Assembly (NCBI GenBank): GCA_002269645.1
Contig: NIVC01001340.1
Span: 248,001-312,000, forward strand
Direction: 5' to 3'
Length of the DNA: 64,000 bases
From: Macrostomum lignano
Lineage: Eukaryota
A program made the position numbers and the translations under genes. The notes beneath the pieces are model-generated. The model did no database searches and had not been told where the DNA came from. It saw only the letters and a list, made by a program, of their open reading frames with translations. This document shows, in pieces, positions 12,888 to 63,019 of this stretch (within the stretch, counting starts at the first letter, position 1; the number at the start of each line of letters is the position of its first letter).

Positions 12888-12934
<47 letters not shown>

Positions 12935-14546: not shown

Positions 14547-15882
14547 CGTGTTAGCGCCAGATTTTGTTCAACTATTAATATCTTTACAAAAAAATTTGCG
14601 ATTAAAACTAACAAAATAGGGGATGCTAAATCGTATAGCTGGCATTTTTGTAGCAAATGAAATTATTTTGTTTTGCGCCTACTGTTAGTAGCTACACATA
14701 GTACTATTTTAATGCGGTTTCTGCGCCATATCAAACTTTTACTCTCTTTTGGGGTTTTCTTACTACTGTAAATTTCGGCAAATTTTTAACCCAGCTATAT
14801 TGGTTAATAGCAGTAATACAAATGAAAAAGCAATTCAAGATTATTTGCCAATTGGACTGCGAAAATTTTACAATTTGAATCGTACACAAAAATAAAGATT
14901 TTGAAGACGAAGAATTATCATTATTAATTTATATTATATTACTTGATTTTGCAAGTCAACGTTCACATGTGTTACAGTATTTCTTATTTATAGTTGCATG
15001 CATATACCATACCTACATGTAGGGTAAAGTTGCTTAAGATCTGTATGTTAAGAAACGAGATATCCGTTCTGACTGTTGGTTAAGTTTATACGCATTAAGA
15101 TGATACATTCTGTTGGAATTACTTTCTGCTGTACGAATAAAGCTTGCCATGTCACAAGCCCAAGCCGCAAGACATACGCCCACGCTAATACAAGTGATTA
15201 GCTAGCTAGCAGTTAGCTAGCAGGACGGATTGGCAAACATAAACACCGAGAGTTTAATGCCGAGAGAGTCAGTCTTAACAGTGTATGCGCACTTCATATG
15301 GATTGCGTCGCGGGCGCAGGCGCAGGCCACCAATTCACTCAAGCAACCAGTTATAATTCGCCCAGATTGGTGAATACACGGCCTTTCTGTACACTCACTG
15401 GCTGGCCTCGTAGTTCCGCGCTATCCCCAGCATTTTTTCTCTGCCCGCTCTTATTCGCTTTCAACCCTTCTTGTCTGTCTTTTTAATCTCCCTTCTATGT
15501 ACTCGTACTTGTGGCCTTCAGACAAACCCACCACCACCCCTAACTTTTCCGACTGTAGACGCGCGCCTCGGTGTACACTCGCTATCTTTCCCCACCCCAA
15601 GTCAGGAGTGTAAGTACATTCACTGTCTTTGGCCCCCCAGCCAGGTCAGGAGTGTACATTCAATCAAGTCTGGGGGAGAAGGGGGTTGAAACGAAAGCTC
15701 AGTTTTCTCTGTCTGCCTATTTTGGCGTGAATTCAAGTGAAGAATACGAGCTATATATTTTATAACCCCCCAGACAGACGCTTTTGATCCATTTTTATAA
15801 CTTCACGACCTTGTCTGTGACTAATAGTCAATCAACTTACTAACCCTTAAATAAACTCAGAAAGTACACAACTCCGAGAAGG

Positions 15883-26148: not shown

Positions 26149-29100
26149 TCAGGAGGCGCCGCCGGCCCTTCCAGTCTCGGACAGGCGCGCCTTCACTCTC
26201 AGCAGGTTGAGCATCTCGCCGAGGCAGCGGCAGCGGGACTGGCAGAGCAGCTCGTCAACTTTGGCCCGACAGCGTCGTTTCGGCTGGCCGCCGTCATCGC
26301 CACCGACGCCGACGGTCTCCTCCTGGCCATCGGCGTCGTCCAGGCCTGGCCGATCTTCGCCTTCCAGACGGCCTCCAGCGCTTCGAGAGCGGTGGCTGCC
26401 CGATTGATCCGGTCGCCGATTCGACTTCGGACTGTCCGACAAAACGTTTCGTAGGGTCGGCGCTGTTTTTTCGACATCGCCAGCTTGCCGGCCAGAGCGA
26501 CGGCGGTGAGCTCGTGCACCAAGCTGAGCAGGCAGACCGACTCGCACAGGCAGGAGAGCCGCTGCAGCTGCTGGCCGAACAGCGGCTCAACGGGGGCGGT
26601 CGCTGCTGACCCGCCATCGGCGTTGATGACCTCCACGGCTGCCAGCTGGGCGTCGAATGACTCCAACAGCGGGTCGATTGAGGATGCGTCGGCGACGCCG
26701 GCGGACGAATTGTCGGTTGACGGTGGCAGCAAGTTTAAGAAGTAGTCGATGGCTGGGGCGAGGAGCGCCTGGCGAATGGAGAGGGGATGGGGCTTGTATC
26801 AGCTACACAAGTTTGAAAATCCCGAAATCCCTGGGATTTTCCTGAGGCTGAAATCCATAATCCTAAAATTCCAAAATCCCAAATCCTAAAATCATAAAAT
26901 CCCAAATCCAAAAATCCCCAAATCCCTAACATCTCAAATCCTAAAATTCGAAAAATCCCAAAACCTGAAACCCCAAACTTCCAAACCGGAAGTTGAAATC
27001 CCAAATTTTAAAATCCCAAAATCCCCAAAATTCATAAAATCCAAAAAATTCCCAAATCCCTAAAATCCCAAATCCTAAAATTCCTAAAATCCCAAATCCA
27101 AAAAAATCCCAAAATCCCTTACATCTCAAATCCTAATATTCCTAAAATCCCAAATCCAAAAACACGAGGCTTAAATCCCAAAGCAATAAATAAAAAATTC
27201 CCAAAACAGAAGGCTAAAATCCCAAATCTTAAAATCCTAAAATCCCAAAACAGGAGGCTAAGAATGCTACATCTCTAAACAGGAATGCCAAGCTACAAAA
27301 AGCACATAAACACATGTTCCATTGCCACCAAAAGAGTTAGAGAATCCCAGTATAATAAAGCTCCCTAAACAAACCTGGGATCCTGCCGCAAAGTGAGCGG
27401 GCAGACAGGCCGGGTACGGCAGGCAGGGATGCGGCTCGATGTCGAAGGCCGGCAATGAGTCGCCAGTCGACCAGCGGACTGCTCCATCAGCTGCTGCTTC
27501 AACGCCTAGCCGCGTCGGCCTGCTTAGTAACGGAGCCGGTGGAAGCCATCTCAGTTGCCATGCGGGTCAGATGGCTGACACAGCGCAGGCCCAGAGACCG
27601 GTACAGCAGCCAGGCGCGCTCGTCTTCCAGCAACGGCTGGCGTCGGCCGTGGCGGCCAGCAGGTCGGAGCGGAACTCGCGAACAATCGAAAGTCTCGACC
27701 ATCGACAAGGCCGTCGAAGGCGGGCTGCGGCGACTCGGCGCTGCTGGAGGACTCCGCGGGCGCCCATCTCGTAGACGCCCTCGACAATGTTGGGCCCGCT
27801 GAGCAGCAGGGACTGGTGGCGCAGCTCCAGGCCGCAGAAGACCGACTCCAGACTCGAGCTCACCCGTCAGTCAGGGCGACAGCTCGGGGACCTGAGCAAT
27901 TCGGCGGAGCTGGTCTAATGTCGCTTATGAACATCGGGACCATCATGAGACTTAGATATACGGCGACCAATCATGGGACCACATCATGGACTTAGGATCG
28001 GGACCATCATGAGACTTAGGATCGGGACCAACATGACTTGGGCGGACCAACATGAGATTTAGGATCGGGACCAACATGAGATTTAGGATCGGGACCAACA
28101 TGAGATTTAGGATCGGACCAACATGAGACTTAGGATCGGGACCATCATGAGACTTAGGATCGGGACCAACATGAGATTTAGGATCGGGACCAACATGGGA
28201 CTTGGGATCAAACCATCATGGGACTTAGGATCGGGACCATCATGAGACTTAGGATCAGAACCATCATGGGACTTAGATCGGGACCACATGTAGATTTAGG
28301 ATCGGACCAACATGGGACTTAGGATCGGGACCAACATGAGATTTAGGATCGGGACCAACATGGGACTTAGGATCGGGACCAACATGGGACTTAGGATCGG
28401 GACCAACATGGGACTTGGGATCAGAACCATCATGGGACTTAGGATCGGGACCAACATGGGACTTGGGATCGGGACCAACATGGGACTTAGGATCAGAACC
28501 ATCATGGGACTTAGGATCGGGAGCAACATGGGACTTAGGATCGGGACCGCCATGGGACTTAGGATTGGGACTGTCTAGAGACTCAGAATCGGGACTGTCT
28601 AGGGACTCATAAACGGGACTGTCTAGAGACTCAGAATCGGGACTGTCTAGGGACTCATAAACAAGACTGTCTAGGGACTCATAAACGGGACTGTCTAGAG
28701 ACTCAGAAACCGGACTGTCTAGGGACTCAGAAACGGGACTGTCTAGGGACTCAGAAACGGGACTGTCTAGGGACTCAGAGTTTAGAATTGAGACTGTCTA
28801 GGAATTGAAAATGGGACTACTGTAGAACTCAGGATCGGGACCAGCTTGGGATTTTCTAGGGATCCAAAATCGGGACTAACTGGGGACTCAAAAATTCAAC
28901 TGAACCAAAAGAACATAATGTACTCGTATAAAGTAAACAAAGCCCTTTTTATACACGCACCTTTCTAAAATTGCCAATCCTGTAAGCCGTGCACAGGTGC
29001 TCAACAATATCGCGCCAGTTGTTTTTATAAAACATGGCCGTATTATTTAGCATAACCAGTCCCTGCGACAACAGGCCGCACCTGGCCACCTGCCTGGACA

Positions 29101-32100
29101 GCACAAAGCCGACGCTCTCCAGCAAGATCTGCTTCACGTCCAGCCGTTCGTACAGGTTGCTAGCCGGAGTCCAGGCGCCCAGGGCGATGAACAGGCGGAT
29201 CATCCACAGCATGATATTGTAGTTACTAGGCGAACCGGACAGGCCCTCGTCCAGGAGGTACAGAGCCTGTAGCAGGTGAGTTTCGCTCTGTTTGGCATCT
29301 TCAACAAGCCAGGCGTCGTAGTGTAGGCTGACTGCCAGAAGCAGCAGGTCGTCGGCCGGTTGAACCTCGGTTGGACGGAGTCCATCAAGCAGGTTGGCGC
29401 GGTAGGCTTGGATTAGTTCAGCTATTTTGGCATTGCGCTGCTCAGCATCCATTGGCTTGTTGAGCAGGCCGCGACTTAGCTGCGGGATCCGGGTTCGCAT
29501 GCGGAGGGGATAGTAGGCTGGCCGTTGCTATGGGGAATCTGGGAATCGGGAATTTGGGATGTATGGACTGAGATGTAGGGACTGGGATGTAGAGACTGGG
29601 ATGTAGGGATTGGAATGTAGCGACTGGTATATAGGGATTGGGATGTAGGGATTGGGACATACGGATTGAGATGTAGGCACTGGGATATAGGGATTAGGAT
29701 GTAGGGATTGGGATGTATGGATTGGGATGTAGGGATTGGGATATACGGATTGAGATGTAGGCACTGGGATATAGGGATTAGGATGTAGGGATTGGGATGT
29801 ATGGATTGGGATGTAGGGATTGGGATATACGGATTGAGATGTAGGCACTGGGATATAGGGATTAGGATGTAGGGATTGGGATGTATGGATTGGGATGTAG
29901 GGACTGGGTTGTAAGGACTGGGATGTAGGGACTGAGATGTAGGGACTGGGATATAGGGATTGGGATATAGGGATTGGGATGTAGGGATTGGGATATACGG
30001 ATTGAGATGTAGGCACTGGGATATAGGGATTAGGATGTAGGGATTGGGATGTAGCGACTGGAATGTAGCGACTGGGATGTAGGGATTGGGATGTAGGGAC
30101 TGGGTTGTAAGGACTGGGATGTAGGGACTGAGATGTAGGGACTGGGATGTAAGGACTGGGATGTAGAGGCTAGGATATAGCGATTGGGATGTAGGGATTG
30201 GGATGTAGTTTCTGGGCCATGCCGAAATTGGGATTTAGGGATTATACACGGACTATATTATTATATGACTTAGTTAATCTCTTTTAAAAGATGACTAGGG
30301 ACTACAGAATTTCACAGACTCGTGTCAGAACGACAGAAGAGACAATTGCTGCAGTTAAATTTGTATAGTCAAGTACCATAAGAGATGAAAGGCCCAGTGG
30401 ACTAATTAGCTTAATAGATCCATTGATTGAAGCTAGACAGAACTCTAACGAAAATGCGGAGAAGGCCTATCCATTCTCTAAAGCTCGGTCAACATATTGC
30501 AGATAATCATATATGAATGGAGCCCGCTGGCTAGAGGCTAAAAAGCAACAGAAAAAAAGCTTGCTGCTGCTGCTAGAGCAAGCAAGGCAAAAAAGATGAT
30601 AGAAGAGCTGGAATGTAAGGGTGCAGCGAAGCGTTTCGAATCCGAGTCCATCTGGAACCTTAGGGCAGGCTTACGGGGCAGGTGAAAAATTGTTATTGAA
30701 ACTAGATCCACTCCACTGCTACCATTAAATCCGCAGAGCTCATTTGAGCTGCTGCTGGGAGTTGTCAGGAACTGCTAATCTACGAGCTAGCCAATCATGG
30801 ATTGCTAATCTGGTCAATCATGGATTGCTAATCTAGTCAATCATGGATTGCTAATCTAGTCAATCATGGATTGCTAATTTAGTCAATCATGGATTGCTAA
30901 TCTGGTCAATCATGGATTGCTAATCTAGCCAAACATGGATTGCTAATCTGGTCAATCATGGATTGCTAATCTAGTCAATCATGGATTGCTAATCTAGCCA
31001 ATCATGGATTGCTAATCTGGTCAATCATGGATTGCTAATCTAGCCAATCATGGATTGCTAATCTGGTCAATCATGGATTGCTAATCTAGTCAATCATGGA
31101 TTGCTAATTTAGTCAATCATGGATTGCTAATCTGGTCAATCATGGATTGCTAATCTAGCCAAACATGGATTGCTAATCTGGTCAATCATGGATTGCTAAT
31201 CTAGTCAATCATGGATTGCTAATCTAGCCAATCATGGATTGCTAATCTGGTCAATCATGGATTGCTAATCTAGCCAATCATGGATTGCTAATCTGGTCAA
31301 TCATGGATTGCTAATCTAGTCAATCATGGATTGCTAATTTAGTCAATCATGGATTGCTAATCTGGTCAATCATGGATTGCTAATCTAGCCAATCATGGAT
31401 TGCTAATCTGGTCAATTATTGATTGCTAATCTGGTAAATTATGGATTGCTAATCTAGCCAGCCATGCTGCCTACCTGTTCATAGTTAATCCTAGCCGTCA
31501 AATCCCTAACAAGCTGTTGCCTATCAGCATCCGCAGCCGCCTTTGGCCACTCGGGCAGGCCAGGCCGGATCAGCTCCAGCAGCTTAGCGGGCGATGAGTT
31601 CTCGTCAGTCTCCGAGAGCAGGGAGCGGAACTGCAGCAGGTCGGAGGCCACGGCTGGCCGGCTGGCGAAGGCCTCAAAGTAAGAGCGCATGAGGGACAGG
31701 GCGGTCTCGGGCCGGCAGCTGACGGGGCAACGCCTCATCAGTTCGAGTCGGGCAAGGCGCGGCCCGCTCAGGCCCGGGTGCTCAGCCGCAATGGCGTCCA
31801 TGCGGGACTGCAGCTCCGATAGGCGAGGATCGGCTTCGACGTAGTCGCCGCCTTGGCTGATGTCGGCGTTAATAGATGATTGAATGCAGCTCTGCCATCT
31901 GGGGAAAGAAGTGGATTAGTATTAGTGTGGATGGAGTGGGTGCCTACCAGTCTAACTTGAACCGGAAGTGGAGATTGCTACCCAGCATAATTGAAAGCGG
32001 AAGTGGATATTGCTACCCAGTCTAACTGGAACCGGAAGTAGAGATTGTTACCCAGTTCAGTTGGCACCGGAAGTGAAGATTGCTACCTAGTTTAATTAAA

Positions 32101-35100
32101 ACCGGAAGTGGAAGCTTTTGCCTATCTAAACTAGAACCGGAAGTGGAAGCTTCTGCTTAGTAAACTGGAACCGGAAGTGGAAGCTTCTGCTTAGTAAACT
32201 GGAACCGGAAGTGGAAGCTTCTGCTTAGTAAACTGGAACCGGAAGTGGAAGCTTCTGCCTAGTAAACTGGAACCGGAAGTGGAAGCTTCTGCCTAACTAA
32301 ACTATAATCGGAAGTGGAAGCTTCTGCCTAACTAAACTATAACCGGAATTGGAAGCTTCTGCCTAACTAAACTATAACCGGAAGTGGAAGCTTCTGCCTA
32401 ACTAAACTAGAACCGGAAGTGGAAGCTTCTGCCTAGTAAACTGGAACCGGAAGTGGAAGCTTCTGCCTAACTAAACTAGAACCGGAAGTGGAAGCTTCTG
32501 CCTAACTAAACTAGAACCGGAAGTGGAAGCTTCTGCCTAGTAAACTGGAACCGGAAGTGGAAGCTTCTGCCTAACTAAACTATAACCGGAAGTAGGGATT
32601 CTTATCCAAGCAAAGCCTTACCTGGCCCAATCGTTCGGCTCAGTGGTTAAATCTTCCCAACGAGCATCGGCGAGTTCCTGTTTGCGGCCCAGCTTCTCCA
32701 GGTAGCCCATTCGTTGCTGACGGGTCATCTCGGTAGACTGCGGACTCAACAATGAGCTCAAAGGACCGTCCAGGGTGGCCAAACAGTCTTCAAATCGTTC
32801 CTGCATTTCTAGCACCATCAAGTACAGCTGCACCTGTGGGTAAGGGGAGAGAGTGAAATCAAATCAGACATTATTAATTAAAAACATTTTTAGGCACTAA
32901 TTGGCAGAAAAATATGAGAGAAATAATGAAAGCACAAAATTCATGGTTTCTGCAAGGGAATTAGAACGTAATTAAAGTGGGAGATGCACAGGAACAATGT
33001 CAATCAGTTATGCATTTATGCTGGTTCACAATCGCATTGCCTGCAAATGTAGAGATGGCCTGGATGCTTTTCTGATAAGAAAGGTGAAAGGGAATAATTG
33101 AAATTCGCGATAATTAGAGGGGGGAATCAATTCTCAACTAACTCTCTTCGAGCTTGAAAGTTCGGGTCTTAATGGAAAATAAGTTTAAAAAATAATTTGG
33201 TGTGAAGTGAAAAGGTAAGATAGTGCGTAGTTTATTAGCGACGATAGAAGAATGGGTGGGGAGTGACGGGAGAGAGATTATGGAGTGATGAGGGTGACTA
33301 AGGGATGCTTTTTGAATAGTGAGTGTAGTGTAGGGTTTGACTAAAAACTGATAAGATAGTGACTGAAGAGTGACTAGGGAGTGACTATGTAGTGACTGGA
33401 GAGTGACTGGAGAGACTGGAGAGTGACTAGAGAGTGACTAGGTAGTGACTAGGTAGTGACTGGAGAGTGACTGGGAAGTGACAAGGGAGTGACTGGAAAG
33501 TGACAATGGAGTGACTTTGTAGTGACTGGAGAGTGACTGGAGAGTGACCAGGGAGTGACTGGAGAGTGACTAGGGAGTGACTAGGTAGTGACTAGAGAAT
33601 GACTAGGGAGTGACTGGAGAGTGACTGGAGAGTGATTAGAGAGTATCTGTAGAGTGACTGGAGAGTGGCTAGGTAGTGACTGGAGAGTGACTAGGGAGTG
33701 ACTAGGGAGTGACTGGGGAGCCAATAGGGAGTGACTGGAGAGTGACTGGGGAGCCAATAGGGAGTGACTGGGAGTGACTGGGGAGTGACTGGGAGTGACT
33801 GGTAAGTGACTAGGGAGTGACTGGAGAGTGACTGGTGAGTGACTAGGGAGTGACTGGGGAGCCAATAGATCGAGTGACTGGTGATAGTGACTAGGGAGTG
33901 ACTGGGGAGCCAATAGGGAGTGACTGGAGAGTGACTGGTGAGTGACTAGGGAGTGACTGGGAGTGACTGGGGAGTGACTGGGAGTGACTGGTGAGTGACT
34001 GGGGAGCCAATAGATCGAGTGACTGGTGAGTGACTAGGGAGTGACTGGGGAGCCAATAGGGAGTGACTGGAGAATGACTAGGGAGTAACTGGAGAGTGAC
34101 CAGAGAGTGAGTAGGGAGTAACTGGAGAGTGACTGGAGAGTGAGTAGGGAGTAACCGGAGAGTGACAGAGGAGTGAGCAGACCTCAGCCTCGGCGTTCAT
34201 CCGGTCCCGGAAGGCCTCGGCCATCTTGGCGGCCAGCGGCAGCAGCATTTTGCTGGCCAGCTCGCCGCCGCACTCAGTGGCCTGCATGAGCACGCTCATC
34301 ACGGACCAGAAATAGTAGGGATTCTTGCTAGGCGCCAGCCGGTGCAGCTTGGCGGCCGTCAGCTGCTGCTTCTTGTGGTCCAGGACTCTGACGTGGGCCA
34401 TGAACAGGCTGGTGAGCAGGTCCTCGCTCTTCGGCTGCTGCTGGACGGCCCGTTCGTACATTGCCGCTATGCGATCGAGCCGATGGCTCTCCTTGTAGAA
34501 ATAGGTCATGGCCTGCAGCACCGACTCTTCGCTGGTGTCCACCCGCTCCACCTGGGAGAGTGAGAATAAAAATTAGCTTTTATATATCCATACTAGAGCT
34601 GATGGGAAGTGTGTGGAATTGGAGCGGCAAAGCGGGCGGAAGTCAGAGAGGGCGGAAGTCAGAGAGAGGGCGGAAGTCAGAGAGAGGGCGGAAGTCAGAG
34701 AGAGGGCGGAAGTCAGAGAGCGGGCGGAAGTCAGAGAGAGGGCGGAAGTCAGAGAGCGGGCGGAAGTCAGAGAGAGGGCGGAGGTCAGAGAGGGCGGAAG
34801 TCAGAGAGAGGGCGGAAGTCAGAGAGCGGACGGAAGTCAGAGGGCGGAAGTCAGAGAGGGCGGAAGTCAGAGAGAGGGCGGAAGTCAGAGAGAGGGCGGA
34901 AGTCAGAGAGAGGGCGGAAGTCAGAGAGGGCGGAAGTCAGAGAGAGGGCGGAAGTCAGAGAGAGGGCGGAGGTCAGAGAGAGGGCGGAGGTCAGAGAGGG
35001 CGGAAGTCAGAGAGGGCAGAAGTAGAGAGGGCGGAAGTCAGAGAGCGGGCGGAAGTCAGAGAGAGGGCAGAAGAACAAAGGACTAGACAAGCAAAGCCGC

Positions 35101-35311
35101 AGCCCACCTCCGAAGCGGCGGCAGTGGCCTCATCAAGGCGGCCGGAGCGCAATAGTGCGAGTGCGCGCAACGCTTTCGCGCATAGTGAATCGCCAGCCTC
35201 TTTGCGCAGAACTTTCTCAGCCTCCTGGATGGCCTTCTTGTTGTTGCCGGCGTCCAAAGCGTCGTAGATCGCCTTGAGGCGACGCTCGCGCGGGTCGCTC
35301 TTGTTGTTCTG
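26149..35311 (-). CDS. NAA25: N-alpha-acetyltransferase 25 (NatB auxiliary subunit, MDM20-like), 7 exons; frameshifts in exons 6-7; no in-exon start ATG
   Basis: Exons 35311-35108, 34551-34183, 32833-32622, 31898-31475, 29479-28961, 27891-27375, 26768-26149. Recognisable segments: [83 protein letters not shown] and C-terminal LGEMLNLL. Exons 1-5 are intact; exons 6-7 need frame corrections. Confidence 0.9.
26810..27250. repeat. AAATCCC-rich degenerate repeat in NAA25 intron 6
   Basis: Direct reading. Confidence 0.85.
27930..28860. repeat. Two adjacent about 24-bp minisatellites (TTAGGATCGGGACCAACATGGGAC; GGGACTGTCTAGGGACTCAGAAAC) in NAA25 intron 5
   Basis: Tandem units. Confidence 0.9.
29530..30215. 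repeat. 14-bp G-rich minisatellite (GGGATGTAGGGATT) in NAA25 intron 4
   Basis: Tandem units. Confidence 0.9.
30790..31455. repeat. 23-bp minisatellite (ATCATGGATTGCTAATCTAGTCA) in NAA25 intron 4
   Basis: Tandem units. Confidence 0.95.
31945..32595. repeat. 34-bp minisatellite (AACCGGAAGTGGAAGCTTCTGCCTAGTAAACTGG) in NAA25 intron 3
   Basis: About 19 units. Confidence 0.95.
33355..34170. repeat. About 10-11-bp degenerate repeat (GGAGAGTGACT) in NAA25 intron 2
   Basis: Tandem units. Confidence 0.9.
34630..35070. repeat. 16-18-bp minisatellite (GGGCGGAAGTCAGAGAGA) in NAA25 intron 1
   Basis: More than 20 units. Confidence 0.95.
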
Positions 35312-36060
35312 CTGCAGAATAAAAAAGACCAACTTTTATTATTCTTAAAAAAAATTTTGTTACATTAACCTAAAACCTTGGGGCGCTAGTGAGATATTTA
35401 TTTTAGTAATAACTTGAGCATTAGACCTGCCATTATCTATAGCCCCAAAGAAAGCGAGAGGCCTTAAGGTCAGAAGGAAGGTCAATCCAGCGAGGCTCTA
35501 GTTGTATTTGGGAAAGCTTGAACAGCCACTTTAGTCAAAGCAAAATACCACCCACGCAATCTTATCTTATGTAGCAGAAATGCGCAAATCCAGATAAATG
35601 GGATATTCTAGCGAAGGTATCAAGTTTTTCATCCATCTTTCCCACTCCCTTCCTTTCTCCCGCTTTCATTCCTCATAGCTATATAGTCCGAACTCGCGAA
35701 ATGAATTATTAATCGGTCACTCAGAGTTCCTAAATCCCTCAAGAGGGTCCCAAACCGGGCATAACGGCAGTGAGTCTGTTTCTTAGGGCTGAAACAAGTA
35801 TACCAGTTAGTTATAATGCTTTCAAGCCGATAGCACGTGCCAGCGGGCGAGCGGGAAATGTGGCGCGCCACGCCGGCTGGGGATTTTTAAATTTATTATC
35901 TCGAAGTCCGCAGTTAGGTAGAAAGCCAAATGGAAGCCTAGTCTAATGTTGCATCAGAGATTAGCTAGGCTTCGCTGGAGACCAGCAAAAGTACAGCAGG
36001 TCGAATCTCGCAGGAGTGAATTTATAGGGCCTTAGCCTTTTAAAAAGAATACAATTCGGG

Positions 36061-39000
36061 TCAGGGGCGATTCTTGTCGGTTTTGGTCAGGCGGGCGATT
36101 CTTGTCAGCCTTGGTCAGGGGGGCGATTCTTGTCGGTTTTGGTCAGGCGGGCGATTCTTGTCAGTTTTGGTCAGGCGGGCGATTCTTGTCAGTTTTGGTC
36201 AGGGGCGATTCTTGTCAGCTTTGGCCTGGGGGTGATTCTTGTCAGTTTTGGTCAGGGGGCGATTCTTGTCAGCTTTGGCCTGGGGGTGATTCTTGTCAGT
36301 TTTGGTCAGGGGGGGGGCGATTCTTGTCAGCTTTGGTCAGGGGCGATTCTTGTCAGTTTTGGTCAGGGGGGCGATTCTTGTCAGTTTTGGTCAGGGGGGC
36401 GATTCTTGTCAGTTTTGGTCAGGGGGGCGATTCTTGTCAGTTTTGGTCAGGGGGGCGATTCTTGTCAGTTTTGGTCAGGGGGCGATTCTTGTCAGTTTTG
36501 GTCAGGGGGGCAATTCTTGTCAGTTTTGGTCAGGGGGGCGATTCTTGTCAGTTTTGGTCAGGGGGCGATTCTTGTCAGTTTTGGTCAGGGGGCGATTCTT
36601 GTCAGCTTTGGTCAGGGGCGATTCTTGTCAGTTTGGGTCAGGGGCGATTCTTGTCAGCTTTGGTCAGGGGCGATTCTTGTCAGTTTTGGTCAGGGGGGCG
36701 ATTCTTGTCAGTTTTGGTCAGGGGGGGGGCGATTCTTGTCAGCTTTGGTCAGGGGGGCGATTCTTGTCAGTTTTGGTCAAGGGGGCGATTCCTGTCAGTT
36801 TTGGTCAGGGGGCGATTCTTGTCAGTTTTGGTCAAGGGGCGATTCTTGTCAGCTTTGGTCAGGGGGCGATTCTTGTCAGTTTTGGTCAGGGGGCGATTCT
36901 TGTCAGCTTTGGTCAGGGGGCGATTCTTGTCAGCTTTGGTCAGGGGCGATTCTTGTCAGCTTTGGTCAGGGGCGATTCTTGTCAGTTTTGGTCAGGGGCG
37001 ATTCTTGTCAGTTTTGGTCAGGGGGGGGTGATTCTTGTCAGTTTTGGTCAGGGGGCGATTCTTGTCAGTTTTGGTCAGGGGGCGATTCTTGTCAGCTTTG
37101 GTCAGGGGGGCGATTCTTGTCAGTTTTGGTCAAGGGGGCGATTCTTGTCAGCCTTGGTCAGGGGGCGATTCTTGTCAGCTTTGGTCAGGGGGGCGATTCT
37201 TGTCAGTTTTGGTCAAGGAGGCGATTCTTGTCAGCTTTGGTTAGGGGCGATTCTTGTCAGTTTTGGTCAGGGGGGGGGCGATTCTTGTCAGTTTTGGTCA
37301 GGGGGGGGGGCGATTCTTGTCAGTTTTGGTCAGGGGGCGATTCTTGTCAGCTTTGGTCAGGGGGCGATTCTTGTCAGTTTTGGTCAGGGGGCGATTCTTG
37401 TTAGCCTTGGTCAGAGGGCGATTCTTGTCAGTTTTGGTCAGGGGGGGGGCGATTCTTGTCAGTTTTGGTCAGGGGGGGGGCGATTCTTGTCAGTTTTGGT
37501 CAGGGGGGCGATTCTTGTCAGTTTTGGTCAGGGGGCGATTCTTGTCAGTTTTGGTCAGGGGCGATTCTTGTCAGTTTTGGTCAGGGGGGCGATTCTTGTC
37601 AGTTTTGGTCAGGGGGGCGATTCTTGTCAGTTTTGGTCAGGGGGCAATTCTTGTCAGTTTTGGTCAGGGGGCGATTCTTGTCAGTTTTGGTCAGGGGCGA
37701 TTCTTGTCAGTTTTGGTCAGGGGGGGGCGATTCTTGTCAGCTTTGGTCAGGGGGGCGATTCTTGTCAGTTTTGGTCAGGGGGCGATTCTTGTCAGTTTTG
37801 GTCAGGGGGGCGATTCTTGTCAGTTTTGGTCAGGGGGCGATTCTTGTCAGCTTTGGTCAGGGGGGCGATTCTTGTCAGTTTTGGTCAGGGGGCGATTCTT
37901 GTCAGTTTTGGTCAGGGGGGCGATTCTTGTCAGTTTTGGTCAGGGGGGCGATTCTTGTCAGCTTTGGTCAGGGGGGCGGTTCTTGTCAGTTTTGGTCAGG
38001 GGGCGATTCTTGTCAGTTTTGGTCAGGGGGGCGATTCTTGTCAGTTTTGGTCAGGGGGGCGATTCTTGTCAGCTTTGGTCAGGGGCGATTCTTGTCAGCT
38101 TTGGTCAGGGGGCGATTCTTGTCAGTTTTGGTCACGGGGGCGATTCTTGTCAGCCTTGGTCAGGGGGGCGATTCTTGTCAGCTTTGGTCAGGGGGCGATT
38201 CTTGTCAGTTTTGGTCAGGGGGGCGATTCTTGTCAGTTTTGGTCAGGGGGGGCGATTCTTGTCAGCTTTGGTCAGGGGGCGATTCTTGTCAGTTTTGGTC
38301 AGGGGGGCGATTCTTGTTAGCCTTGGTCAGAGGGCGATTCTTGTCAGCTTTGGTCAGGGGGGCGATTCTTGTCAGTTTTGGTCAGGGGGGCGATTCTTGT
38401 CAGCTTTGGTCAGGGGGGCGATTCTTGTCAGTTTTGGTCAGGGGGCGATTCTTGTCAGCTTTGGTCAGGGGCGATTCTTGTCAGTTTTGGTCAGGGGCGA
38501 TTCTTGTCAGTTTTGGTCAGGGGGCGATTCTTGTCAGTTTTGGTCAGGGGGGCGATTCTTGTCAGTTTTGGTCAGGGGGGCGATTCTTGTCAGTTTTGGT
38601 CAGGGGGCGATTCTTGTCAGCTTTGGTCAGGGGGGCGATTCTTGTCAGCTTTGGTCAGGGGCGATTCTTGTCAGTTTTGGTCAGGGGGGCGATTCTTGTC
38701 AGTTTTGGTCAGGGGCGATTCTTGTCAGTTTTGGTCAGGGGCGATTCTTGTCAGTTTTGGTCAGGGGGGCGATTCTTGTCAGTTTTGGTCAGGGGGGCGA
38801 TTCTTGTCAGCTTTGGTTAGGGGCGATTCTTGTCAGTTTTGGTCAGGGGGCGATTCTTGTCAGTTTTGGTCAGGGGGCGATTCTTGTCAGTTTTGGTCAG
38901 GGGGCGATTCTTGTCAGCTTTGGTTAGGGGGCGATTCTTGTCAGTTTGGGTCAGGGGGCGATTCTTGTCAGCTTTGGTCAGGGGGGGGGCGATTCTTGTC

Positions 39001-40320
39001 AGTTTTGGTCAGGGGGGCGATTCTTGTCAGTTTTGGTCAGGGGGCGATTCCTGTCAGCTTTGGTCAGGGGGGCGATTCTTGTCAGTTTTGGTCAAGGGGG
39101 CGATTCTTGTCAGCCTTGGTCAGGGGGCGATTCTTGTCAGCTTTGGTCAAGGGGGCGATTCTTGTCAGCTTTGGTTAGGGGCGATTCTTGTCAGTTTTGG
39201 TCAGGGGGGGGGCGATTCTTGTCAGTTTTGGTCAGGGGGGGGGGCGATTCTTGTCAGTTTTGGTCAGGGGAGCGATTCTTGTCAGCTTTGGTCAGGGGGC
39301 GATTCTCGTCAGTTTTGGTCAGGGGGGCGATTCTTGTCAGCTTTGGTCAGGGGGGCGATTCTTGTCAGTTTTGGTCAGGGGGGCGATTCTTGTCAGTTTT
39401 GGTCAGGGGGGCGATTCTTGTCAGTTTTGGTCAGGGGGCGATTCTTGTCAGCTTTGGTCAGGGGCGATTCTTGTCAGTTTTGGTCAGGGGGGCGATTCTT
39501 GTCAGTTTTGGTCAGGGGCGATTCTTGTCAGTTTTGGTCAGGGGGCGATTCTTGTCAGTTTTGGTCAGAGGGGGGCGATTCTTGTCAGTTTGGGTCAGGG
39601 GGCGATTCTTGTCAGCTTTGGTCAGGGGCGATTCTTGTCAGTTTTGGTCAGGGGGGGGGGCGATTCTTGTCAGTTTTGGTCAGGGGGGGGCGATTCTTGT
39701 CAGTTTTGGTCAGGGGGGCGATTCTTGTCAGTTTTGGTCAGGGGGGCGATTCTTGTCAGCCTTGGTCAAGGGGCGATTCTTGTCAGCTTTGGTCAGGGGG
39801 GCGATTCTTGTCAGTTTTGGTCAAGGGGGCGATTCTTGTCAGTTTTGGTCAGGGGGGCGATTCTTGTCAGTTTTGGTCAAGGGGGCGATTCTTGTCAGCT
39901 TTGGTCAAGGGGGCGATTCTTGTCAGCTTTGGTCAGGGGGGCGATTCTTGTCAGTTTTGGTCAGGGGGGCGATTCTTGTCAGCTTTGGTCAGGGGGGCGA
40001 TTCTTGTCAGTTTTGGTCAGGGGGGCGATTCTTGTCAGTTTTGGTCAGGGGGCGATTCTTGTCAGTTTTGGTCAGGGGGCGATTCTTGTCAGCTTTGGTT
40101 AGGGGCGATTCTTGTCAGTTTTGGTCAGGGGGCGATTCTTGTCAGTTTTGGTCAGGGGGCGATTCTTGTCAGTTTTGGTCAGGGGGGCGATTCTTGTCAG
40201 CTTTGGTTAGGGGCGATTCTTGTCAGTTTTGGTCAGGGGGCGATTCTTGTCAGTTTTGGTCAGGGGGCGATTCTTGTCAGCCTTGGTCAGGGGGCGATTC
40301 TTGTCAGGGGGGGGCGATTC
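36061..40320. repeat. 4.25-kb satellite, unit G(4-9)CGATTCTTGTCAGTTTTGGTCA (about 27 bp, roughly 150 copies)
   Basis: Homogeneous tandem array between DDX18 and NAA25; accounts for all ORFs called at 36-40 kb. Confidence 0.97.
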
Positions 40321-40725: not shown

Positions 40726-43304
40726 TTAATTGTGCAGCTTTCTGACCGCCTTTCTCTGGCCAGATTTCTTAAATTTAATGGCAGCGCCAGGACCGGTTGC
40801 GCCGCCGTGAACGCGCCGTCGCGCCGACGCCTTGCCGCTGGCGCGCACGTCCAAATCGACCAGAGGCGGCACGGCCAAGCCGAAGTTTTTCGCCGCCGCC
40901 TTCAAATCCAGTCTCTCAACGGCGAAGCACTTTTTCAGCGCGTGGCTGGCGTAGGCCCTGACGAAGCCTTTGTAGGCCTCTTGGGCGCTGCGGCACAGGT
41001 AGTAGTTCTTCTCAACCAGCTTTTCCAGCTGCGTCTGAATGTCGCTAACCTTCGACCAGCTGAACTCGTACTCGGTGACGCGAACTTTAGCGGCGCGCAA
41101 ATAAACTAGAAATGACAGCTCGTGATCGCGCAGCATCAGCAGAGCGCGGCCGGAGGCGCCGGCGCGTGCGGTGCGACCAACTCGGTGAATGTACTCCTGG
41201 GTGAGGGAGGGGTTGGGTGGGTGTACTCCTGGGTGAGGGAGGGGTTGGGTGGGTGTACTCCTGGGTGTACTTTTATATGGGGGTGTACTTCTGGGTGTAT
41301 GTACTCTTAGATGGGGTGTACTTCTGGGTGTATGTACTCTTAGATGGGGTGTACTCCTGGGTGTATGTACTCTTAGATGGGGTGTACTCCTGGGTGTATG
41401 TACTCTTAGATGGGGTGTACTCCTGGGTGTATGTACTCTTAGATGGGGTGTACTACTGGGTGTTATACTCTTGGATTGGAATGGCGGGCGGAAGCAGCAA
41501 AAGGCAACAAAGACTCGGGCAGCACAAAGACGCACCTTGGGATCGTCGGGCGGATCGTACTGGACAATCCAGTCAACCCGCGGGATATCCAAGCCTCTGG
41601 CGGCGACGTCGGTGCAGAGCAGCGTGGCCGACTCGGCCGAGCCGAACTGGAAGAATGTCTGAGTCCGTTTAGCCTGCTTCTGCTTGCCGTGAATGGCCAT
41701 GACTGGCAGGTCGATGTAGTTCAGCAGCTCGTAGTAGAATTTCACTTCCAGACAGGAGGACATGAACACCATGACTTTGCGCTTGCGGTTCTTCTTCAAG
41801 AAGGTGTACAGCACGGAGAAGCGCCGCTCGGCGGGGCAGACAACGTACCTGCGGTTTGGGAATGACAAGATTTGCATCAGAATCTGCAGTGTGGTAGGCT
41901 GTAGTGGCTTCTTTACCATCAAATGGGCGGCTTTCGTACAAATATTGGTTCCCTACCCTTCAGGTGGTGTCTCCCATACCCTTCAGGTAGTGTCTCCCAT
42001 ACCCTTCAAGGTGGTGTCTCCCATACCCTTCAAGGTGGTGTCTCCCATAGCCTTCAAGGTGGTGTCTCCCATACCCTTCAGGTAGTGTCTCCCATAGCCT
42101 TCAAGGTGGTGTCTCCCATAGCCTTCAAGGTGGTGTCTCCCATACCCTTCAGGTGGTGTCTCCCATACCCTTCAAGGTGGTGTCTCCCATACCCTTCAAG
42201 GTGGTGTCTCCCATACCCTTCAAGGTGGTGTCTCCCATACCCTTCAAGGTGGTGTCTCCCATACCCTTCAAGGTGGTGTCTCCCATACCCTCCAGGTGGT
42301 GTCTCCCATACACTTCCGGTAGTGTCTCCCATAGCCTTCAAGGTGGTGTCTCCCATACCCTTCAGGTAGTGTCTCCCATACCCTTTAGGTGGTGTCTCCC
42401 ATAGCCTTCAATTGGTGTCTCCCATAGCCTTCAAGGTGGTGTCTCCCATACCCTTAAAGGTGGTGTCTCCCATACCCTTTAGGTGGTGTCTCCCATAGCC
42501 TTCAATTGGTGTCTCCCATAGCCTTCAATTGGTGTCTCCCATAGCCTTCAATTGGTGTCACCCATAGCCTTCAATTGGTGTCTCCCATACTGCACCCTCA
42601 GACGATGTACTTCATTCCGTCATTGACTATCGTTAGCTTTTCAGATCCTACACTTATAACTGGAATTTCCCGTCAATATGATAAACCTTTCTTCCGTGCA
42701 CTAACGCTCCAGTCAGCTGATTTACAGTAAACAGAGATCATCAAAAAAGCTAAAAAGCAATGGAAAGCAATACTACTGTCGACGCCTCCCCCCCCCTACC
42801 CGAATAAACAATAGCAAAAGCACAGACAATTAGGAGACAGTCTACACCTACGTTTTCTACATCTACAGCTTAGAACCAGCGACAATTGAAGAATCAAGCG
42901 TATCGCGTTTCGGTACAAGAGCGCTATTTGCTTTAGCAGTGCGCATACACGGTTTTTTGCTGACAAGCAATGTAAATAAGCAGAATTTGAAGCATTTGCA
43001 ATTTAGGACGGGCCTGATAGTGGCACAGCTCAAAGCAGGATAATAGCAGCTGAGTAGCATTGAATGACTACTGTCCAAGGAACAAAACTGGGCAGGTGAT
43101 ATTATTAAGAAGTCAAATTGTTTTTTCTTCTGTGTTAGAAATGTCAAAATAAACTATAATGGGCAATTAGCCATACCTGTTTACCTGACTGTTAAATTGA
43201 GGGGCCGGTACAGATTACAGACGGAGAATAGAAGAATATCCGCCTAGGAAGGGGGACAGCCGAGACAGACATACAGACAGACTGGCACTAAGACAGAGGA
43301 ACAC

Positions 43305-43390
<86 letters not shown>

Positions 43391-46300
43391 GGACAGAGCC
43401 TCACCCCTGCTCCAGGCTGTCAACGGTGGCGGCCAACTCCTTGTCGTCAACGCCCACCCGGAGGCACTCGGTGCGCAGGGCCTCCTTGGCCAGGGCCCGG
43501 GTCCGATCGTTGAGCGTGGCGGTGAACAGCATCGACTGGCGCTTCTTCGGCAGCAGCCGCAGAATCTGCTTCATCTCTTCTTCGAAGCCGACATCGAGGA
43601 TTCTGTCGGCCTCATCCAGGATCAGACAGGCCAAGTTCTTATAAAGAAAGTGCTCGGTGTTCTGCAGATGGTCGAGCAGACGGCCCGGCGTAGCGATGAG
43701 GATGGTGCAGCCTTTGGCGAGGTTGCGAGCCTCTTCAGCGCGATTGGTGCCGCCCATGACAACCCCGATGCGGAAGTTGTGGTGCTTCACCAGCTCCTGG
43801 CGAACAGGAACGTTTGACAAATGTTAGAGGGTCAAACTGAGGCTTAACTATATGCATATGTACTGTTTTAATTTGGTTAGTGACTGACAGGTGTCTGGGG
43901 AATTCTCAGGTGGGCAATGAGCTTCTTATTGAAGAGTCAGTTTAGAGAGTCTGGCAGTCCATGGAAAATTCAACTGGTTTTTCACAGGCATTCCATGGAG
44001 GCTGAAACCGGTTTCTCACAGGCATTCCATAGAGGCTGAAACCGGTTTCTCACAGGCATTCCATGGAAAATTCAACCGGTTTCTCACAGGCATTCCATGG
44101 AAAATTCAACCGGTTTCTCACAGGCATTCCATGGAAAATTCAACCGGTTTCTCACAGGCATTCCATGGAGGCTGAAACCGGTTTCTCACAGGCATTCCAT
44201 GGAGGCTGAAACCGGTTTCTCACAGGCATTCCATGGAGGCTGAAACCGGTTTCTCACAGGCATTCCATGGAGGCTGAAACCGGCTTCTCACAGGCATTCC
44301 ATGGAGGCTGAAACCGGTTTCTCACAGGCATTCCATGGAGGCTGAAACCGGTTTCTCACAGGCATTCCATGGAGGCTGAAACCGGTTTCTCACAGGCATT
44401 CCATGGAAAATTCAACCGGTTTCTCACAGGCATTCCATGGAGGCTGAAACCGGTTTCTCACAGGCATTCAATGGAGGTTGAAACCGGTTTCTCACAGGCA
44501 TTCTATGGAGGTTGAAACCGGTTTCTCACAGGCATTCCATGGAAAATTCAACCGGTTTCTCACAGGCATTCCATGGAGGCTGAAACCGGTTTCTCACAGG
44601 CATTCAATGGAGGTTAAAACCGGTTTCTCACAGGCATTCTATGAAGGCTGAAACCGGTTTCTCACAGGCATTCCATGGAGGCTGAAACCGGTTTCTCACA
44701 GGCATTCCATGGAGGCTGAAACCGGTTTCTCACAGGCATTCCATGGAGGCTGAAACCGGTTTCTCACAGGCATTCCATGGAAAATTCAACCGGTTTCTCA
44801 CAGGCATTCCATGGAGACTGAAACCGGTTTCTCACAGGCATTCCATGGAGACTGAAACCGGTTTCTCACAGGCATTCCATGGAGACTGAAACCGGTTTCT
44901 CACAGGCATTCCATGGAGACTGAAACCGGTTTCTCACAGGCATTCCATGGAGACTGAAACCGGTTTCTCACAGGCATTCCATGGAGACTGAAACCGGTTT
45001 CTCACAGGCATTCCATGGAGACTGAAACCGGTTTCTCACAGGCATTCCATGGAGACTGAAACCGGTTTCTCACAGCCATTCCATTGAGGCTGATAAAAAT
45101 CCAATTAGAAGAATTTTCACTTTTATGCAATAAACTTCTTCTAGCATCGCAGGTGGCCCGATGCCGAAGGGGGGTAAATGCATAATCCTGTCGCCTTAGT
45201 GACAAGGGGTTGTCGAAATTGAATTTGATTATAATAATGGTATAACCAGATAAATAACGTGCAATACTCCCTATAAAAGCTGGTTGATTACCACTTAGCT
45301 GAAATAAGGTACAGTTTGTACTTGCTGGTAACATGGTAACAGCAGGTAACAGCACGCAGCGCGTCTCTTTGCTGTAACTCCCTTCTCATGCTGCTTTTGT
45401 ACTTCACGAGATAACAAATAAAGGAGATACACACTCAGAATCTTGTGAACTTTTCTCAGAGCCATTTACAAAACACAGGCCCGCTGTTCTCGTCCCTACT
45501 GTGGGCGATGCGATTTAAAGTCTAACTCGCTAAATTTAATAAATTATTTTCACGACTCCTGCACGACTCTACAATCACGGGACAGACTTACATGTCACGA
45601 CTCGTTGCATTTTTTGCAGTCATGGCACTCGGCAGAGGCACGTACATTTGCAACGACTTTTTCAGTGAAAATATTCCTCATTAGGGGCAAAAGAAAAGAG
45701 AAAAAAGACTTTTCGGGATTTGTCATTGGAAGTTGACTGACTCACTGACTGGCTGACTGACTGACTGGCTGACTGACTGGCTAGCTGACTGACTGACTGG
45801 CTGACTGACTGGCTAGCTGACTGACTGACTGACTGGCTGACTGACTGACTGACTGACTGACTGACTGACTGACTGACTGACTGACTGACTGGCTGACTGA
45901 CTGGCTGACTGACTGACTGACTGACTGACTGACTGACTGACTGACTGACTGACTGACTGACTGACTGGCTAGCTGACTGACTGACTGGCTGACTGACTGA
46001 CTGACTGACTGACTGACTGACTGACTGACTGACTGACTGACTGACTGGCTGACTGACTGACTGACTGACTGACTCACTGACTGGCTGACTGACTGACTGG
46101 CTGACTGACTGACTGACTGACTGACTGACTGACTGACTGACTGACTGACTGACTGACTGACTGACTGACTCACTGACTGGCTGACTGACTGACTGGCTGA
46201 CTGACTGACTGACTGACTGACTGACTGACTGACTGACTGACTGACTGACTGACTGACTGAATGACTGGCTGACTGACTGATTGACTGACTGACTGACTGA

Positions 46301-54589: not shown

Positions 54590-55234
54590 GATTTGGCTAA
54601 TTGACTAATTTCGCACCAGTCGATTGACTCAACTATTTTTCAACGCGACGATTAGGACGACGCATTTGCTGGGTCCGCCTGATTTTGTCACTGTTTATGC
54701 ATGCAATCAAAATCATAATTGAGAATTAATAAATCAAAATAGCACGCGAAACAATGAATAGAATATGGATGGAAAACTGACTGCTGGTCTTTAATCAATT
54801 GATGATGATTGCCTACAAAATAAAGCGTTGCATTCAATAGATGCAATTAATTGATCTGCTTTTTAAATGGCTTTGAATAGGAGAACCCAGACCTAATTAA
54901 AATTTCTGTAGCGAAAAAATGCTGATTTAAACAAACCTAAAAACAAAGGAGCAGCGCTGAACTGTAGAGGTTCTGTAGACTTATGGGGTTTAAGCTGTCG
55001 TACCACGGTTAACAGGAGCTTTAGAATTTTAGAAACTGGCCAACAACAAGACGACAGTCAACCAGCAGCAAGCTAGGAGGCAAAATAGTCATACCTTTCT
55101 CAGAATCACGCAATGTAGACTCTCTGCGCCTTTAGGGTTGGCCCTTCATGGACGCGAATCGCGTGCTAAATCTCTAAAGCCATTTTTCTAGCACACAATC
55201 AAACCTTCGGTCTCAGTCGAGAGTCGAATACAGC

Positions 55235-62976: not shown

Positions 62977-63019
<43 letters not shown>

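What the first reader, a model, noticed from the sequence alone, without database searches (positions are those of the whole stretch)
35108..35402. NAA25 has no start codon of its own: candidate for a spliced-leader-donated AUG
Seen: the conserved N-terminus ([12 protein letters not shown]) begins exactly at a phase-0 acceptor (tttttattctgcag|CAG, 35311). An in-frame TAA lies at 35338-35336, and the first in-frame Met is about 80 residues downstream. I found no convincing ATG-plus-donor exon in phase 0 within 35340-36060. Established: flatworm SL RNAs end in AUG, which can serve as the initiator Met. Inference: trans-splicing would give M-QNNKSDP..., perfectly in frame. AATAAA hexamers on the same strand at about 35402 and 35340 fit an operon-like junction.
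Basis: partly seen in the sequence, partly recalled or inferred. Interest (0 to 1): 0.75.

Follow-up and report, generated by a model that had tools for sequence, protein, structure and literature searches.

The report
NAA25 start codon likely from spliced leader
In this flatworm (Macrostomum lignano) sequence the NAA25 gene's first coding exon begins at a splice acceptor with no start codon of its own, so its AUG most likely comes from the trans-spliced leader RNA, a mechanism already known in flatworms; this is one more example, not yet shown by RNA data.

Summary
On the minus strand, exon 35311-35108 ([12 protein letters not shown]...) starts directly after tcttttttattctgcag. Three in-frame TAAs lie just upstream and there is no ATG between them and the exon. 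The gene is NAA25, the NatB auxiliary subunit. The organism is Macrostomum lignano: the top database hit is a 99%-identical UniProt entry from that species. Its published 35-nt spliced leader (SL) ends in ATG, about 30% of its genes are trans-spliced, and the published acceptor motif [T/C]TNCAG fits this site. Joining SL to exon gives [13 protein letters not shown], with Met 9 residues before ERRL (median 10 in 70 homologues). Without the SL AUG, the first two AUGs on the mRNA are out of frame and the first in-frame Met is codon 84. In the 5.4 kb back to the upstream gene (DDX18) there are only 17 ATG-plus-phase-0-donor candidates. None matches the six verified donors of this locus. Sea anemone and spider have no intron between the ATG and this block. 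I found no RNA evidence for this gene, so trans-splicing is inferred (about 0.7). The AATAAA/operon argument is weak. The mechanism has been known since 2006, so interest is modest.

The parts
35108..35311 (-). First coding exon of NAA25: [68 protein letters not shown]. It contains no in-frame ATG and is followed by the donor GAG|GTGGGC.
   Evidence: Aligns to human NAA25 (6vp9_B) from residue 7 and to homologues from spider, molluscs and amphioxus.
35312..35328 (-). Pyrimidine tract plus 3' splice acceptor (tcttttttattctgcag), the proposed SL trans-splice site. A tandem second AG at 35310-35309 gives an alternative exon start at 35308.
   Evidence: CTGCAG fits the M. lignano trans-splice acceptor motif [T/C]TNCAG (PMC8629364). 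The same boundary is used in UniProt model A0A1I8G1X3.
35336..35347 (-). Three in-frame TAA stop codons (35347, 35341, 35338) that close the reading frame upstream of the acceptor.
35312..36058 (-). Unique 747-bp stretch between the minisatellite and the acceptor: the presumed outron or promoter-proximal region. It holds 9 ATGs, all with short ORFs, and AATAAA at 35897, 35402 and 35340.
36059..40307 (.). 28-bp minisatellite (about 153 copies, 4.25 kb) filling most of the DDX18-NAA25 intergenic space. The repeat unit has no ATG on the gene strand.
40726..41196 (-). Last exon of the upstream same-strand gene DDX18/HAS1, with stop codon TAA at 40728-40726. The weak donor GCG|GTCAGA at 40747/40746 is the one used in the fused database model.
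   Evidence: Human DDX18 in the PDB matches at E = 6e-104.
34183..34551 (-). NAA25 exon 2 ([21 protein letters not shown]...NAEAE). It contains the first in-frame Met.
32622..32833 (-). NAA25 exon 3.
31475..31898 (-). NAA25 exon 4.
28961..29479 (-). NAA25 exon 5, the core of the NatB_MDM20 domain.
   Evidence: Pfam PF09797 at 1.7e-41.
27375..27889 (-). NAA25 exon 6. The reading frame switches at least 6 times relative to the M. lignano protein A0A1I8J6L5.

Best explanation
The window is Macrostomum lignano DNA. NAA25 (NatB auxiliary subunit) lies on the minus strand, downstream of DDX18 on the same strand. Its pre-mRNA has no 5' donor and no ATG ahead of the first conserved codons. The region upstream of 35311 is therefore an outron. 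It is transcribed either from a promoter of its own just past the minisatellite or as read-through from DDX18. The spliceosome joins the 35-nt spliced leader (...ATTTATTGCAUG) to the acceptor at 35311, or to the tandem site at 35308. The leader's terminal AUG is the only AUG in the leader. It becomes the first AUG of the mRNA, in frame, and ribosomes start there to make [13 protein letters not shown]... (or M-NNKSDP...). Shown: the exon boundary, the frame, the stops, the lack of an ATG, the gene identities, the organism, and the in-frame junction. Taken from the literature: the SL sequence and the frequency and motif of trans-splicing in this species. Inferred: that this particular acceptor is trans-spliced and that the SL AUG is the initiator.
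For: (1) Organism. The best hit of the representative search is 99% identical and is UniProt A0A1I8G1X3 of M. lignano. The second hit, at 93%, is A0A1I8J6L5, 'NAA25 homolog', M. lignano. (2) Species background. M. lignano has one 35-nt SL, CGGTCTCTTACTGCGAAGACTCAATTTATTGCATG. About 30% of its genes and 45% of its human-conserved genes are trans-spliced, and the top acceptor motif is [T/C]TNCAG (PMC8629364). The window has CTGCAG|. A genome paper on two other Macrostomum species (M. cliftonense and M. hystrix), which aligns their SLs with M. lignano's, notes that the SL's final ATG is likely a translation start codon (PMC10468722). (3) SL plus exon gives one open frame, [13 protein letters not shown].... 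The next two AUGs (mRNA positions 164 and 214) are out of frame with 16- and 23-codon ORFs, and the first in-frame Met is codon 84. (4) N-terminal length. Met falls 9 residues before ERRL, against a median of 10 in 70 homologues. Exon residue 4 aligns to human NAA25 residue 7. (5) Cis alternatives. Only 16 ATGs lie on this strand between the DDX18 stop and the acceptor. They give 17 ATG..phase-0 GT/GC candidates. Seven locus donors were checked: six from the spliced alignment and E5's AAG|GTGCGT, read directly; they comprise six distinct sequences, since GTGCGT occurs twice. All have G at -1 and G at +5. No GT candidate has both. (6) In sea anemone and spider the ATG is contiguous with ...ERRLRP(V/I)Y in one exon, so the acceptor here is not an inherited intron position. 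(7) Two automatic M. lignano models also failed to find a start. One fuses the exon to DDX18 at exactly this acceptor. The other starts at an out-of-frame ATG inside exon 1. (8) Precedent. In S. mansoni the SL AUG is in frame in 28% of trans-spliced transcripts, and more than 40 cDNAs need it (Cheng 2006, as cited in PMC9851317).
Against: I saw no RNA-level evidence for this gene: no SL-bearing read, cDNA or annotation. NAA25 is absent from the supplementary tables searched. The locus's own donors are weak and varied (GTGGGC, GTCTGC, GTTTGT), so a weak cis donor cannot be excluded on sequence alone. Examples are MKAGERKG GGA|GTGGGA at 35669-35646 and ATG|GCAGGT at 35433-35431. The acceptor motif does not separate cis from trans sites. 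The assembly carries indel errors, so frame arguments for multi-codon upstream candidates are not fully safe. The context of the SL AUG (T at -3) is not a strong Kozak match.
Confidence: 0.7

Rival explanations
1. A small cis-spliced 5' exon supplies the ATG. The best candidates are ATG AAA GCG GGA GAA AGG AAG GGA|GTGGGA (35669-35646, giving MKAGERKG-QNNK...), ATG|GCAGGT (35433-35431, a GC donor giving M-QNNK), ATG|GTGTCT (40473-40471), and the reader's ATG ACA|GCAAGT (40442-40437).
For: These candidates exist in phase 0. True donors in this gene are themselves non-consensus, for example GAG|GTGGGC. About 55% of conserved M. lignano genes are not trans-spliced (PMC8629364).
Against: No GT candidate has both G-1 and G+5, which all seven checked donors at this locus have. 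None matches GT[G/A]AG, the motif of about 65% of M. lignano donors. The only candidate with both G-1 and G+5 uses a rare GC donor in a poor context. MKAGERKG would put Met 17 residues before ERRL, and only 3 of 70 homologues reach 16 or more. A shuffle of the unique sequence gives a 'good' candidate by chance in 60% of trials, so even a good one would be weak evidence. Two automatic annotations did not find such an exon.
Confidence: 0.15
2. NAA25 is expressed here only as a read-through fusion with DDX18. A donor seven codons before the DDX18 stop (GCG|GTCAGA, 40747) is cis-spliced to the 35311 acceptor, as in UniProt A0A1I8G1X3 (...[10 protein letters not shown]|QNNKSDP...).
For: The fused model exists in a public database, and its junction is in frame with a GT-AG intron. 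The two genes are adjacent on the same strand. Flatworm acceptors are often shared between cis- and trans-splicing (PMC12582326).
Against: The model is partial at both ends and carries frameshifts from a draft assembly, which suggests an automatic merge. The donor GTCAGA is off-consensus, with C at +3 and C at -2. A 5.4-kb intron made mostly of minisatellite would be needed. A helicase-NAA25 fusion has no counterpart among the 150 homologues listed. Almost all of those carrying the N-terminal block start within about 30 residues of it. Only two (P0074, P0083) have roughly 300-residue N-terminal extensions, which I did not examine.
Confidence: 0.04
3. The copy in this window is not normally translated from this N-terminus. 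Either it is a decaying duplicate (M. lignano is a hidden polyploid), or translation starts at a near-cognate codon (in-frame CTG 35317 or TTG 35332 on an unspliced leader) or at Met-84.
For: Exon 27889-27375 needs at least 6 frame switches to follow the M. lignano protein. In-frame CTG and TTG lie between the last TAA and the exon.
Against: Exons 1-5 are frame-intact and conserved. The frame breaks seen are single-base deletions at short homopolymers. The other assembly has its own breaks at different places, which points to sequencing error. Starting at Met-84 would delete the most conserved N-terminal TPR block, and two out-of-frame AUGs precede it. A T-rich tract followed by CAG is an acceptor, not a leader.
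Confidence: 0.08

Closest known systems
Schistosoma mansoni mRNAs that take their initiator Met from the SL 3'-terminal AUG (Cheng, Cohen, Ndegwa & Davis 2006, J Biol Chem 281:733; cited in PMC9851317, PMC12582326 and PMC5832876)
   Same: A flatworm SL ending in AUG; an acceptor placed in phase directly before the conserved coding sequence; no ATG of the gene's own.
   Different: A different flatworm lineage (free-living Macrostomorpha) and a different gene. In the schistosome the class rests on cDNAs and translation assays; here it rests on sequence inference only.
[quoted passage not shown]
   Same: Same species and SL. A conserved housekeeping gene, an acceptor matching [T/C]TNCAG, a same-strand upstream gene, and an intergenic space inflated by tandem repeats, as those authors describe for operons.
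   Different: The repeat-adjusted distance is about 1.1-1.2 kb from the DDX18 stop codon, at or just above their 1-kb operon cut-off. The trans-spliced status of this gene was not available to me.
slORFs: ORFs created by start codons inside spliced leaders (slORFfinder, PMC9851317)
   Same: The start codon is contributed by the SL sequence.
   Different: That work is about detecting such ORFs from SL reads and ribosome footprints in nematodes, Oikopleura and trypanosomes. Here the ORF is the canonical conserved protein, not a new or alternative one.

Membership tests
Flatworm mRNA with SL-donated initiator AUG | The organism has an SL RNA whose exon ends in AUG | tested here: met
   Organism identified as M. 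lignano. Its SL, CGGTCTCTTACTGCGAAGACTCAATTTATTGCATG, is taken from PMC8629364. No SL RNA gene lies in the window itself.
Flatworm mRNA with SL-donated initiator AUG | A 3' splice acceptor directly upstream of the first coding nucleotides, with the SL AUG falling in frame | tested here: met
   tcttttttattctgcag|CAG at 35312/35311. SL plus exon reads [13 protein letters not shown]... with no stop, and the alternative acceptor at 35308 is also in frame.
Flatworm mRNA with SL-donated initiator AUG | No in-frame ATG of the gene's own before the conserved N-terminus, whether unspliced or in a cis exon | tested here: inconclusive
   An unspliced start is excluded by three in-frame TAAs and the lack of an ATG. 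There are 17 cis candidates, all poor, but weak donors do occur in this gene.
Flatworm mRNA with SL-donated initiator AUG | SL sequence physically joined to this acceptor in RNA | not testable with these tools
   No M. lignano transcripts or reads were reachable. Protein searches returned no transcript-derived N-terminus, and the supplements lack NAA25.
Flatworm mRNA with SL-donated initiator AUG | The protein begins with the SL-encoded Met | not testable with these tools
   Needs N-terminal proteomics.
M. lignano operon (Ustyantsev & Berezikov criteria) | Adjacent genes on the same strand with no opposite-strand gene between them | tested here: inconclusive
   DDX18 (stop at 40728-40726) and NAA25 (35311) are both on the minus strand. 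The space between holds a minisatellite and 1.17 kb of unique sequence, within which I noticed no obvious gene. I did not screen the plus strand of this interval specifically.
M. lignano operon (Ustyantsev & Berezikov criteria) | Repeat-adjusted intergenic distance below 1 kb | tested here: inconclusive
   5414 bp from stop to acceptor, minus the 4249-bp minisatellite, leaves about 1.17 kb, and less after subtracting the unknown DDX18 3'UTR. The DDX18 poly(A) site is not known.
M. lignano operon (Ustyantsev & Berezikov criteria) | The downstream gene is SL trans-spliced | not testable with these tools
   Same limitation as above.
NAA25 / MDM20 (NatB auxiliary subunit) | NatB_MDM20 domain and N-terminal TPR region homologous to NAA25 | tested here: met
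   PF09797 at 1.7e-41 on exon 5. Human NAA25 6vp9_B at 1.1e-53 over exons 1-3. About 50% identity to animal NAA25.

The most novel reading that the evidence does not exclude
DDX18 and NAA25 form a two-gene operon whose intercistronic spacer has been inflated to 5.4 kb by a 4.2-kb minisatellite. The same acceptor at 35311 would then be used in two ways. Mostly it would take the SL, which donates the AUG. A minority would be cis-spliced from a donor seven codons before the DDX18 stop, giving a real DDX18-NAA25 fusion transcript. A side effect of the SL start is an MQ- (or MN-) N-terminus, which is the substrate class of NatB itself. Other animals' NAA25 begins MA-. The subunit would thus become a substrate of its own enzyme only because of trans-splicing.
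Probability: 0.1. Interest if true: 0.45.

Novelty: new member of a known kind. Interest (0 to 1): 0.3.

Why it matters
If confirmed, it adds a conserved housekeeping gene in a free-living model flatworm to the class of genes that cannot be translated correctly without the spliced leader's AUG. In practice it matters for annotation. Both public automatic models of this gene mis-start: one is fused to DDX18 and the other begins at an out-of-frame ATG. Pipelines that trim the SL including its ATG will call such genes 5'-partial. It also bears on transgene and knock-in design in M. lignano, where a genomic fragment of such a gene has no start codon. It does not change what is known about the mechanism.

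Tried and rejected
(1) A protein word-index search with exon 1 alone found nothing, and so did one with the NatB_MDM20 exon. The 261-aa query gave only distant partial homologues. The organism came only from the exhaustive representative search plus a cluster look-up.

(2) I looked for gene-level trans-splicing records for NAA25 in the supplements of Grudniewska 2016 and 2018, the 2025 MBE parasitic-flatworm SL paper, and Boroni 2018. There were no occurrences. A paper search for 'Macrostomum' plus 'NAA25' found none. Wasik 2015 is not held.

(3) I considered rebuilding the exact annotated protein for an exact-sequence look-up. I dropped this because the window has multiple frame breaks in exon 6, so no exact match could be expected.

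(4) Rfam and tRNA scans of the window found nothing, and no SL RNA gene is present.

(5) The phase-1 reading of ATGGCAG|GTCTAA (35433) looked attractive because it reads 'MA...' like other NAA25 proteins. I rejected it: both AGs at the acceptor are compatible only with phase 0, and the spliced product runs out of frame into a stop.

(6) An acceptor at 35333/35332 (aaaag|TTG) would add LVFFILQ. I rejected it because its tract is poor and no homologue has such a segment.

(7) I did not scan the metagenome or viral DNA collections for the SL-exon junction, because a laboratory flatworm's transcripts are not expected there.

Full report
WHAT IS IN THE SEQUENCE

On the minus strand, a T-rich tract and acceptor (tcttttttattctgcag, 35328-35312) are followed at 35311 by CAG AAC AAC AAG AGC GAC CCG CGC GAG CGT CGC CTC. 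The open frame runs to 35108 and ends at the donor GAG|GTGGGC. Upstream in the same frame are three TAAs (35347, 35341, 35338), with no ATG after them. The nearest upstream ATG (35365) is followed immediately by TAA.

GC content rises from 0.26 in the 100 nt before the acceptor to 0.62 in the exon. The acceptor is a tandem CAG|CAG, so 35308 is a second in-frame site. All coordinates and statements in the finding were reproduced.

THE GENES

The exon plus the next two exons (34551-34183 and 32833-32622) match human NAA25 in the PDB (6vp9_B, E = 1.1e-53). Exon residue 4 aligns to human residue 7. Exon 29479-28961 carries the NatB_MDM20 domain (PF09797, 1.7e-41).

The next gene upstream on the same strand is DDX18/HAS1. 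Human DDX18 in the PDB matches at 6e-104, and Pfam finds DEAD and CTE_SPB4 domains. Its stop codon is at 40728-40726. Between the two genes lie three segments:
- 419 bp of unique sequence;
- a 28-bp minisatellite of about 153 copies (36059-40307);
- 747 bp of unique sequence.

THE ORGANISM

The word-index protein searches did not show this. The exhaustive search did. The top hit is 99% identical and the second 93%. They are UniProt A0A1I8G1X3 and A0A1I8J6L5 of Macrostomum lignano.

For this species the literature gives the following (PMC8629364; PMC5730564):
- a single 35-nt spliced leader, CGGTCTCTTACTGCGAAGACTCAATTTATTGCATG;
- trans-splicing of about 30% of genes and 45% of human-conserved genes;
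- [T/C]TNCAG as the top motif at trans-splice acceptors;
- operons whose spacers are often inflated by repeats.

All reported parasitic-flatworm SLs end in ATG (PMC12582326). A genome paper on two other Macrostomum species (M. cliftonense and M. hystrix), which compares their SLs with M. lignano's, says the SL's final ATG is likely a start codon (PMC10468722). So the refuting condition 'organism lacks SL trans-splicing' is excluded.

DOES THE SL AUG FIT?

Joining the SL to 35311 gives one open frame, [21 protein letters not shown].... The SL has no other ATG. The next two AUGs of the mRNA are out of frame, with 16- and 23-codon ORFs. The first in-frame Met is codon 84, inside the conserved TPR region.

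Met would sit 9 residues before the conserved ERRL. In 70 homologues that start with Met the median is 10, with a range of 1-29.

IS THERE A CIS ALTERNATIVE?

Between the DDX18 stop and the acceptor there are only 16 ATGs on this strand, none in the body of the minisatellite. They give 17 combinations of ATG, open codons and a phase-0 GT or GC.

Seven donors at this locus could be checked: six by spliced alignment to the M. lignano proteins and exon 5's AAG|GTGCGT, read directly. They comprise six distinct sequences, because AAG|GTGCGT occurs twice: GAG|GTGGGC, GAG|GTCTGC, CAG|GTAAGG, CAG|GTAGGC, CAG|GTTTGT and AAG|GTGCGT. All have G at -1 and G at +5. No GT candidate has both, and none matches GT[G/A]AG.

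The only candidate with both G-1 and G+5 is ATG|GCAGGT (35433-35431), a GC donor in a poor context. The best GT candidate is MKAGERKG GGA|GTGGGA (35669-35646). It would put Met 17 residues before ERRL, and only 3 of 70 homologues reach 16 or more.

Because this gene's real donors are themselves weak, a cis exon cannot be ruled out from sequence. I give it about 0.15.

COMPARATIVE GENE STRUCTURE

In the sea anemone Actinia tenebrosa and the spider Caerostris extrusa, the ATG is contiguous with ...ERRLRP(V/I)Y in one exon, and both share an intron right after that Y. M. lignano lacks that intron and instead has an acceptor eight codons before ERRL. The acceptor is therefore not an inherited intron position. 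That is what a trans-splice site, or a newly gained 5' intron, would look like.

WHAT THE PUBLIC MODELS SAY

A0A1I8G1X3 is partial at both ends and reads ...[10 protein letters not shown]|[12 protein letters not shown].... It is DDX18 spliced from GCG|GTCAGA (40747), seven codons before its stop, to exactly the 35311 acceptor. It also has frameshifted stretches. I read it as an automatic merge on a draft contig. It does confirm the exon boundary independently, and it may reflect read-through evidence.

A0A1I8J6L5 starts [13 protein letters not shown]..., which is the out-of-frame ATG at mRNA position 214 inside exon 1. Neither pipeline found a proper start.

THE OPERON ARGUMENT

The AATAAA hexamers at 35402 and 35340 are real, but they sit in an AT-rich tract. 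DDX18 has TATAAA and AATAAT about 35-45 nt after its stop, and no AATAAA until 35897. After removing the minisatellite, the stop-to-acceptor distance is about 1.17 kb, near the published 1-kb operon cut-off. Operon membership is open, and it is not needed for the main claim.

DATA QUALITY

Exon 27889-27375 is 10 nt shorter than the coding sequence implied by the M. lignano protein. It needs at least 6 frame switches; those I read by eye are single-base losses in short homopolymers. The other assembly has its own breaks elsewhere. This looks like long-read indel error rather than decay. Exons 1-5 are intact.

VERDICT

My confidence is about 0.7, limited by the absence of any RNA evidence in reach.

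The mechanism has been established since Cheng et al. 2006. In S. mansoni the SL AUG is in frame in 28% of trans-spliced transcripts, and more than 40 cDNAs need it (as cited in PMC9851317). This is a new member of a known kind, of modest interest, with practical value for annotation.

One curiosity rests on the established specificity of NatB for Met-Asp/Glu/Asn/Gln N-termini. An MQ- or MN- start would make this NatB subunit a NatB substrate, whereas NAA25 in other animals starts MA-.

Noticed in passing
window 27375-27889 (minus strand): This NAA25 exon is 10 nt shorter than the coding sequence implied by the M. lignano protein A0A1I8J6L5. It needs at least 6 frame switches; those I read by eye are single-base losses at short homopolymers. 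This is probably assembly indel error, or less likely a decaying duplicate copy.
   Followed up: partly
window 36059-40307: A 4.25-kb minisatellite of a 28-bp unit (about 153 copies, 92% matches) fills the DDX18-NAA25 spacer. Many other minisatellites lie in the introns of both genes, for example 30787-31457, 31944-32593, 33358-34176, 34634-35073, 41950-42590 and 43972-45093.
   Followed up: partly
window 40747 to 35311 (minus strand): UniProt A0A1I8G1X3 ('ATP-dependent RNA helicase', M. lignano) is a DDX18-NAA25 fusion model joined at GCG|GTCAGA and the NAA25 acceptor. UniProt A0A1I8J6L5 (NAA25 homolog) starts at an out-of-frame ATG inside exon 1. Both look mis-annotated at the point where an SL AUG would be needed.
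   Followed up: yes
window 35270-35285; L001 3001-3130; L002 3001-3065: The intron that follows ...ERRLRP(V/I)Y in the sea anemone and spider NAA25 genes is absent in M. lignano, where [12 protein letters not shown] is continuous.
   Followed up: partly
window 35308-35313: The tandem CAGCAG (NAGNAG) acceptor means two in-frame products are possible, M-QNNK and M-NNK. Both MQ- and MN- N-termini belong to the NatB substrate class, so the NatB auxiliary subunit would be a substrate of its own enzyme.
   Followed up: no
window 41526-41584 and 41226-40747 versus P0024: In the DDX18 region the window reads the conserved motifs cleanly ([29 protein letters not shown]), while the UniProt model is frameshifted there. 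The two assemblies carry errors in different places.
   Followed up: partly
window about 11100-14400 (+), 15840-16170 (+), 52570-54610 (-), 58080-58960 (-), 62560-63480 (-): Long open segments that look like exons of other genes. By eye these resemble an HGSNAT-like acetyltransferase, a CAP/SCP-domain protein and a Na+/H+ exchanger, among others. I did not check them with any search, and I did not examine whether their 5' ends show the same acceptor-without-ATG pattern.
   Followed up: no
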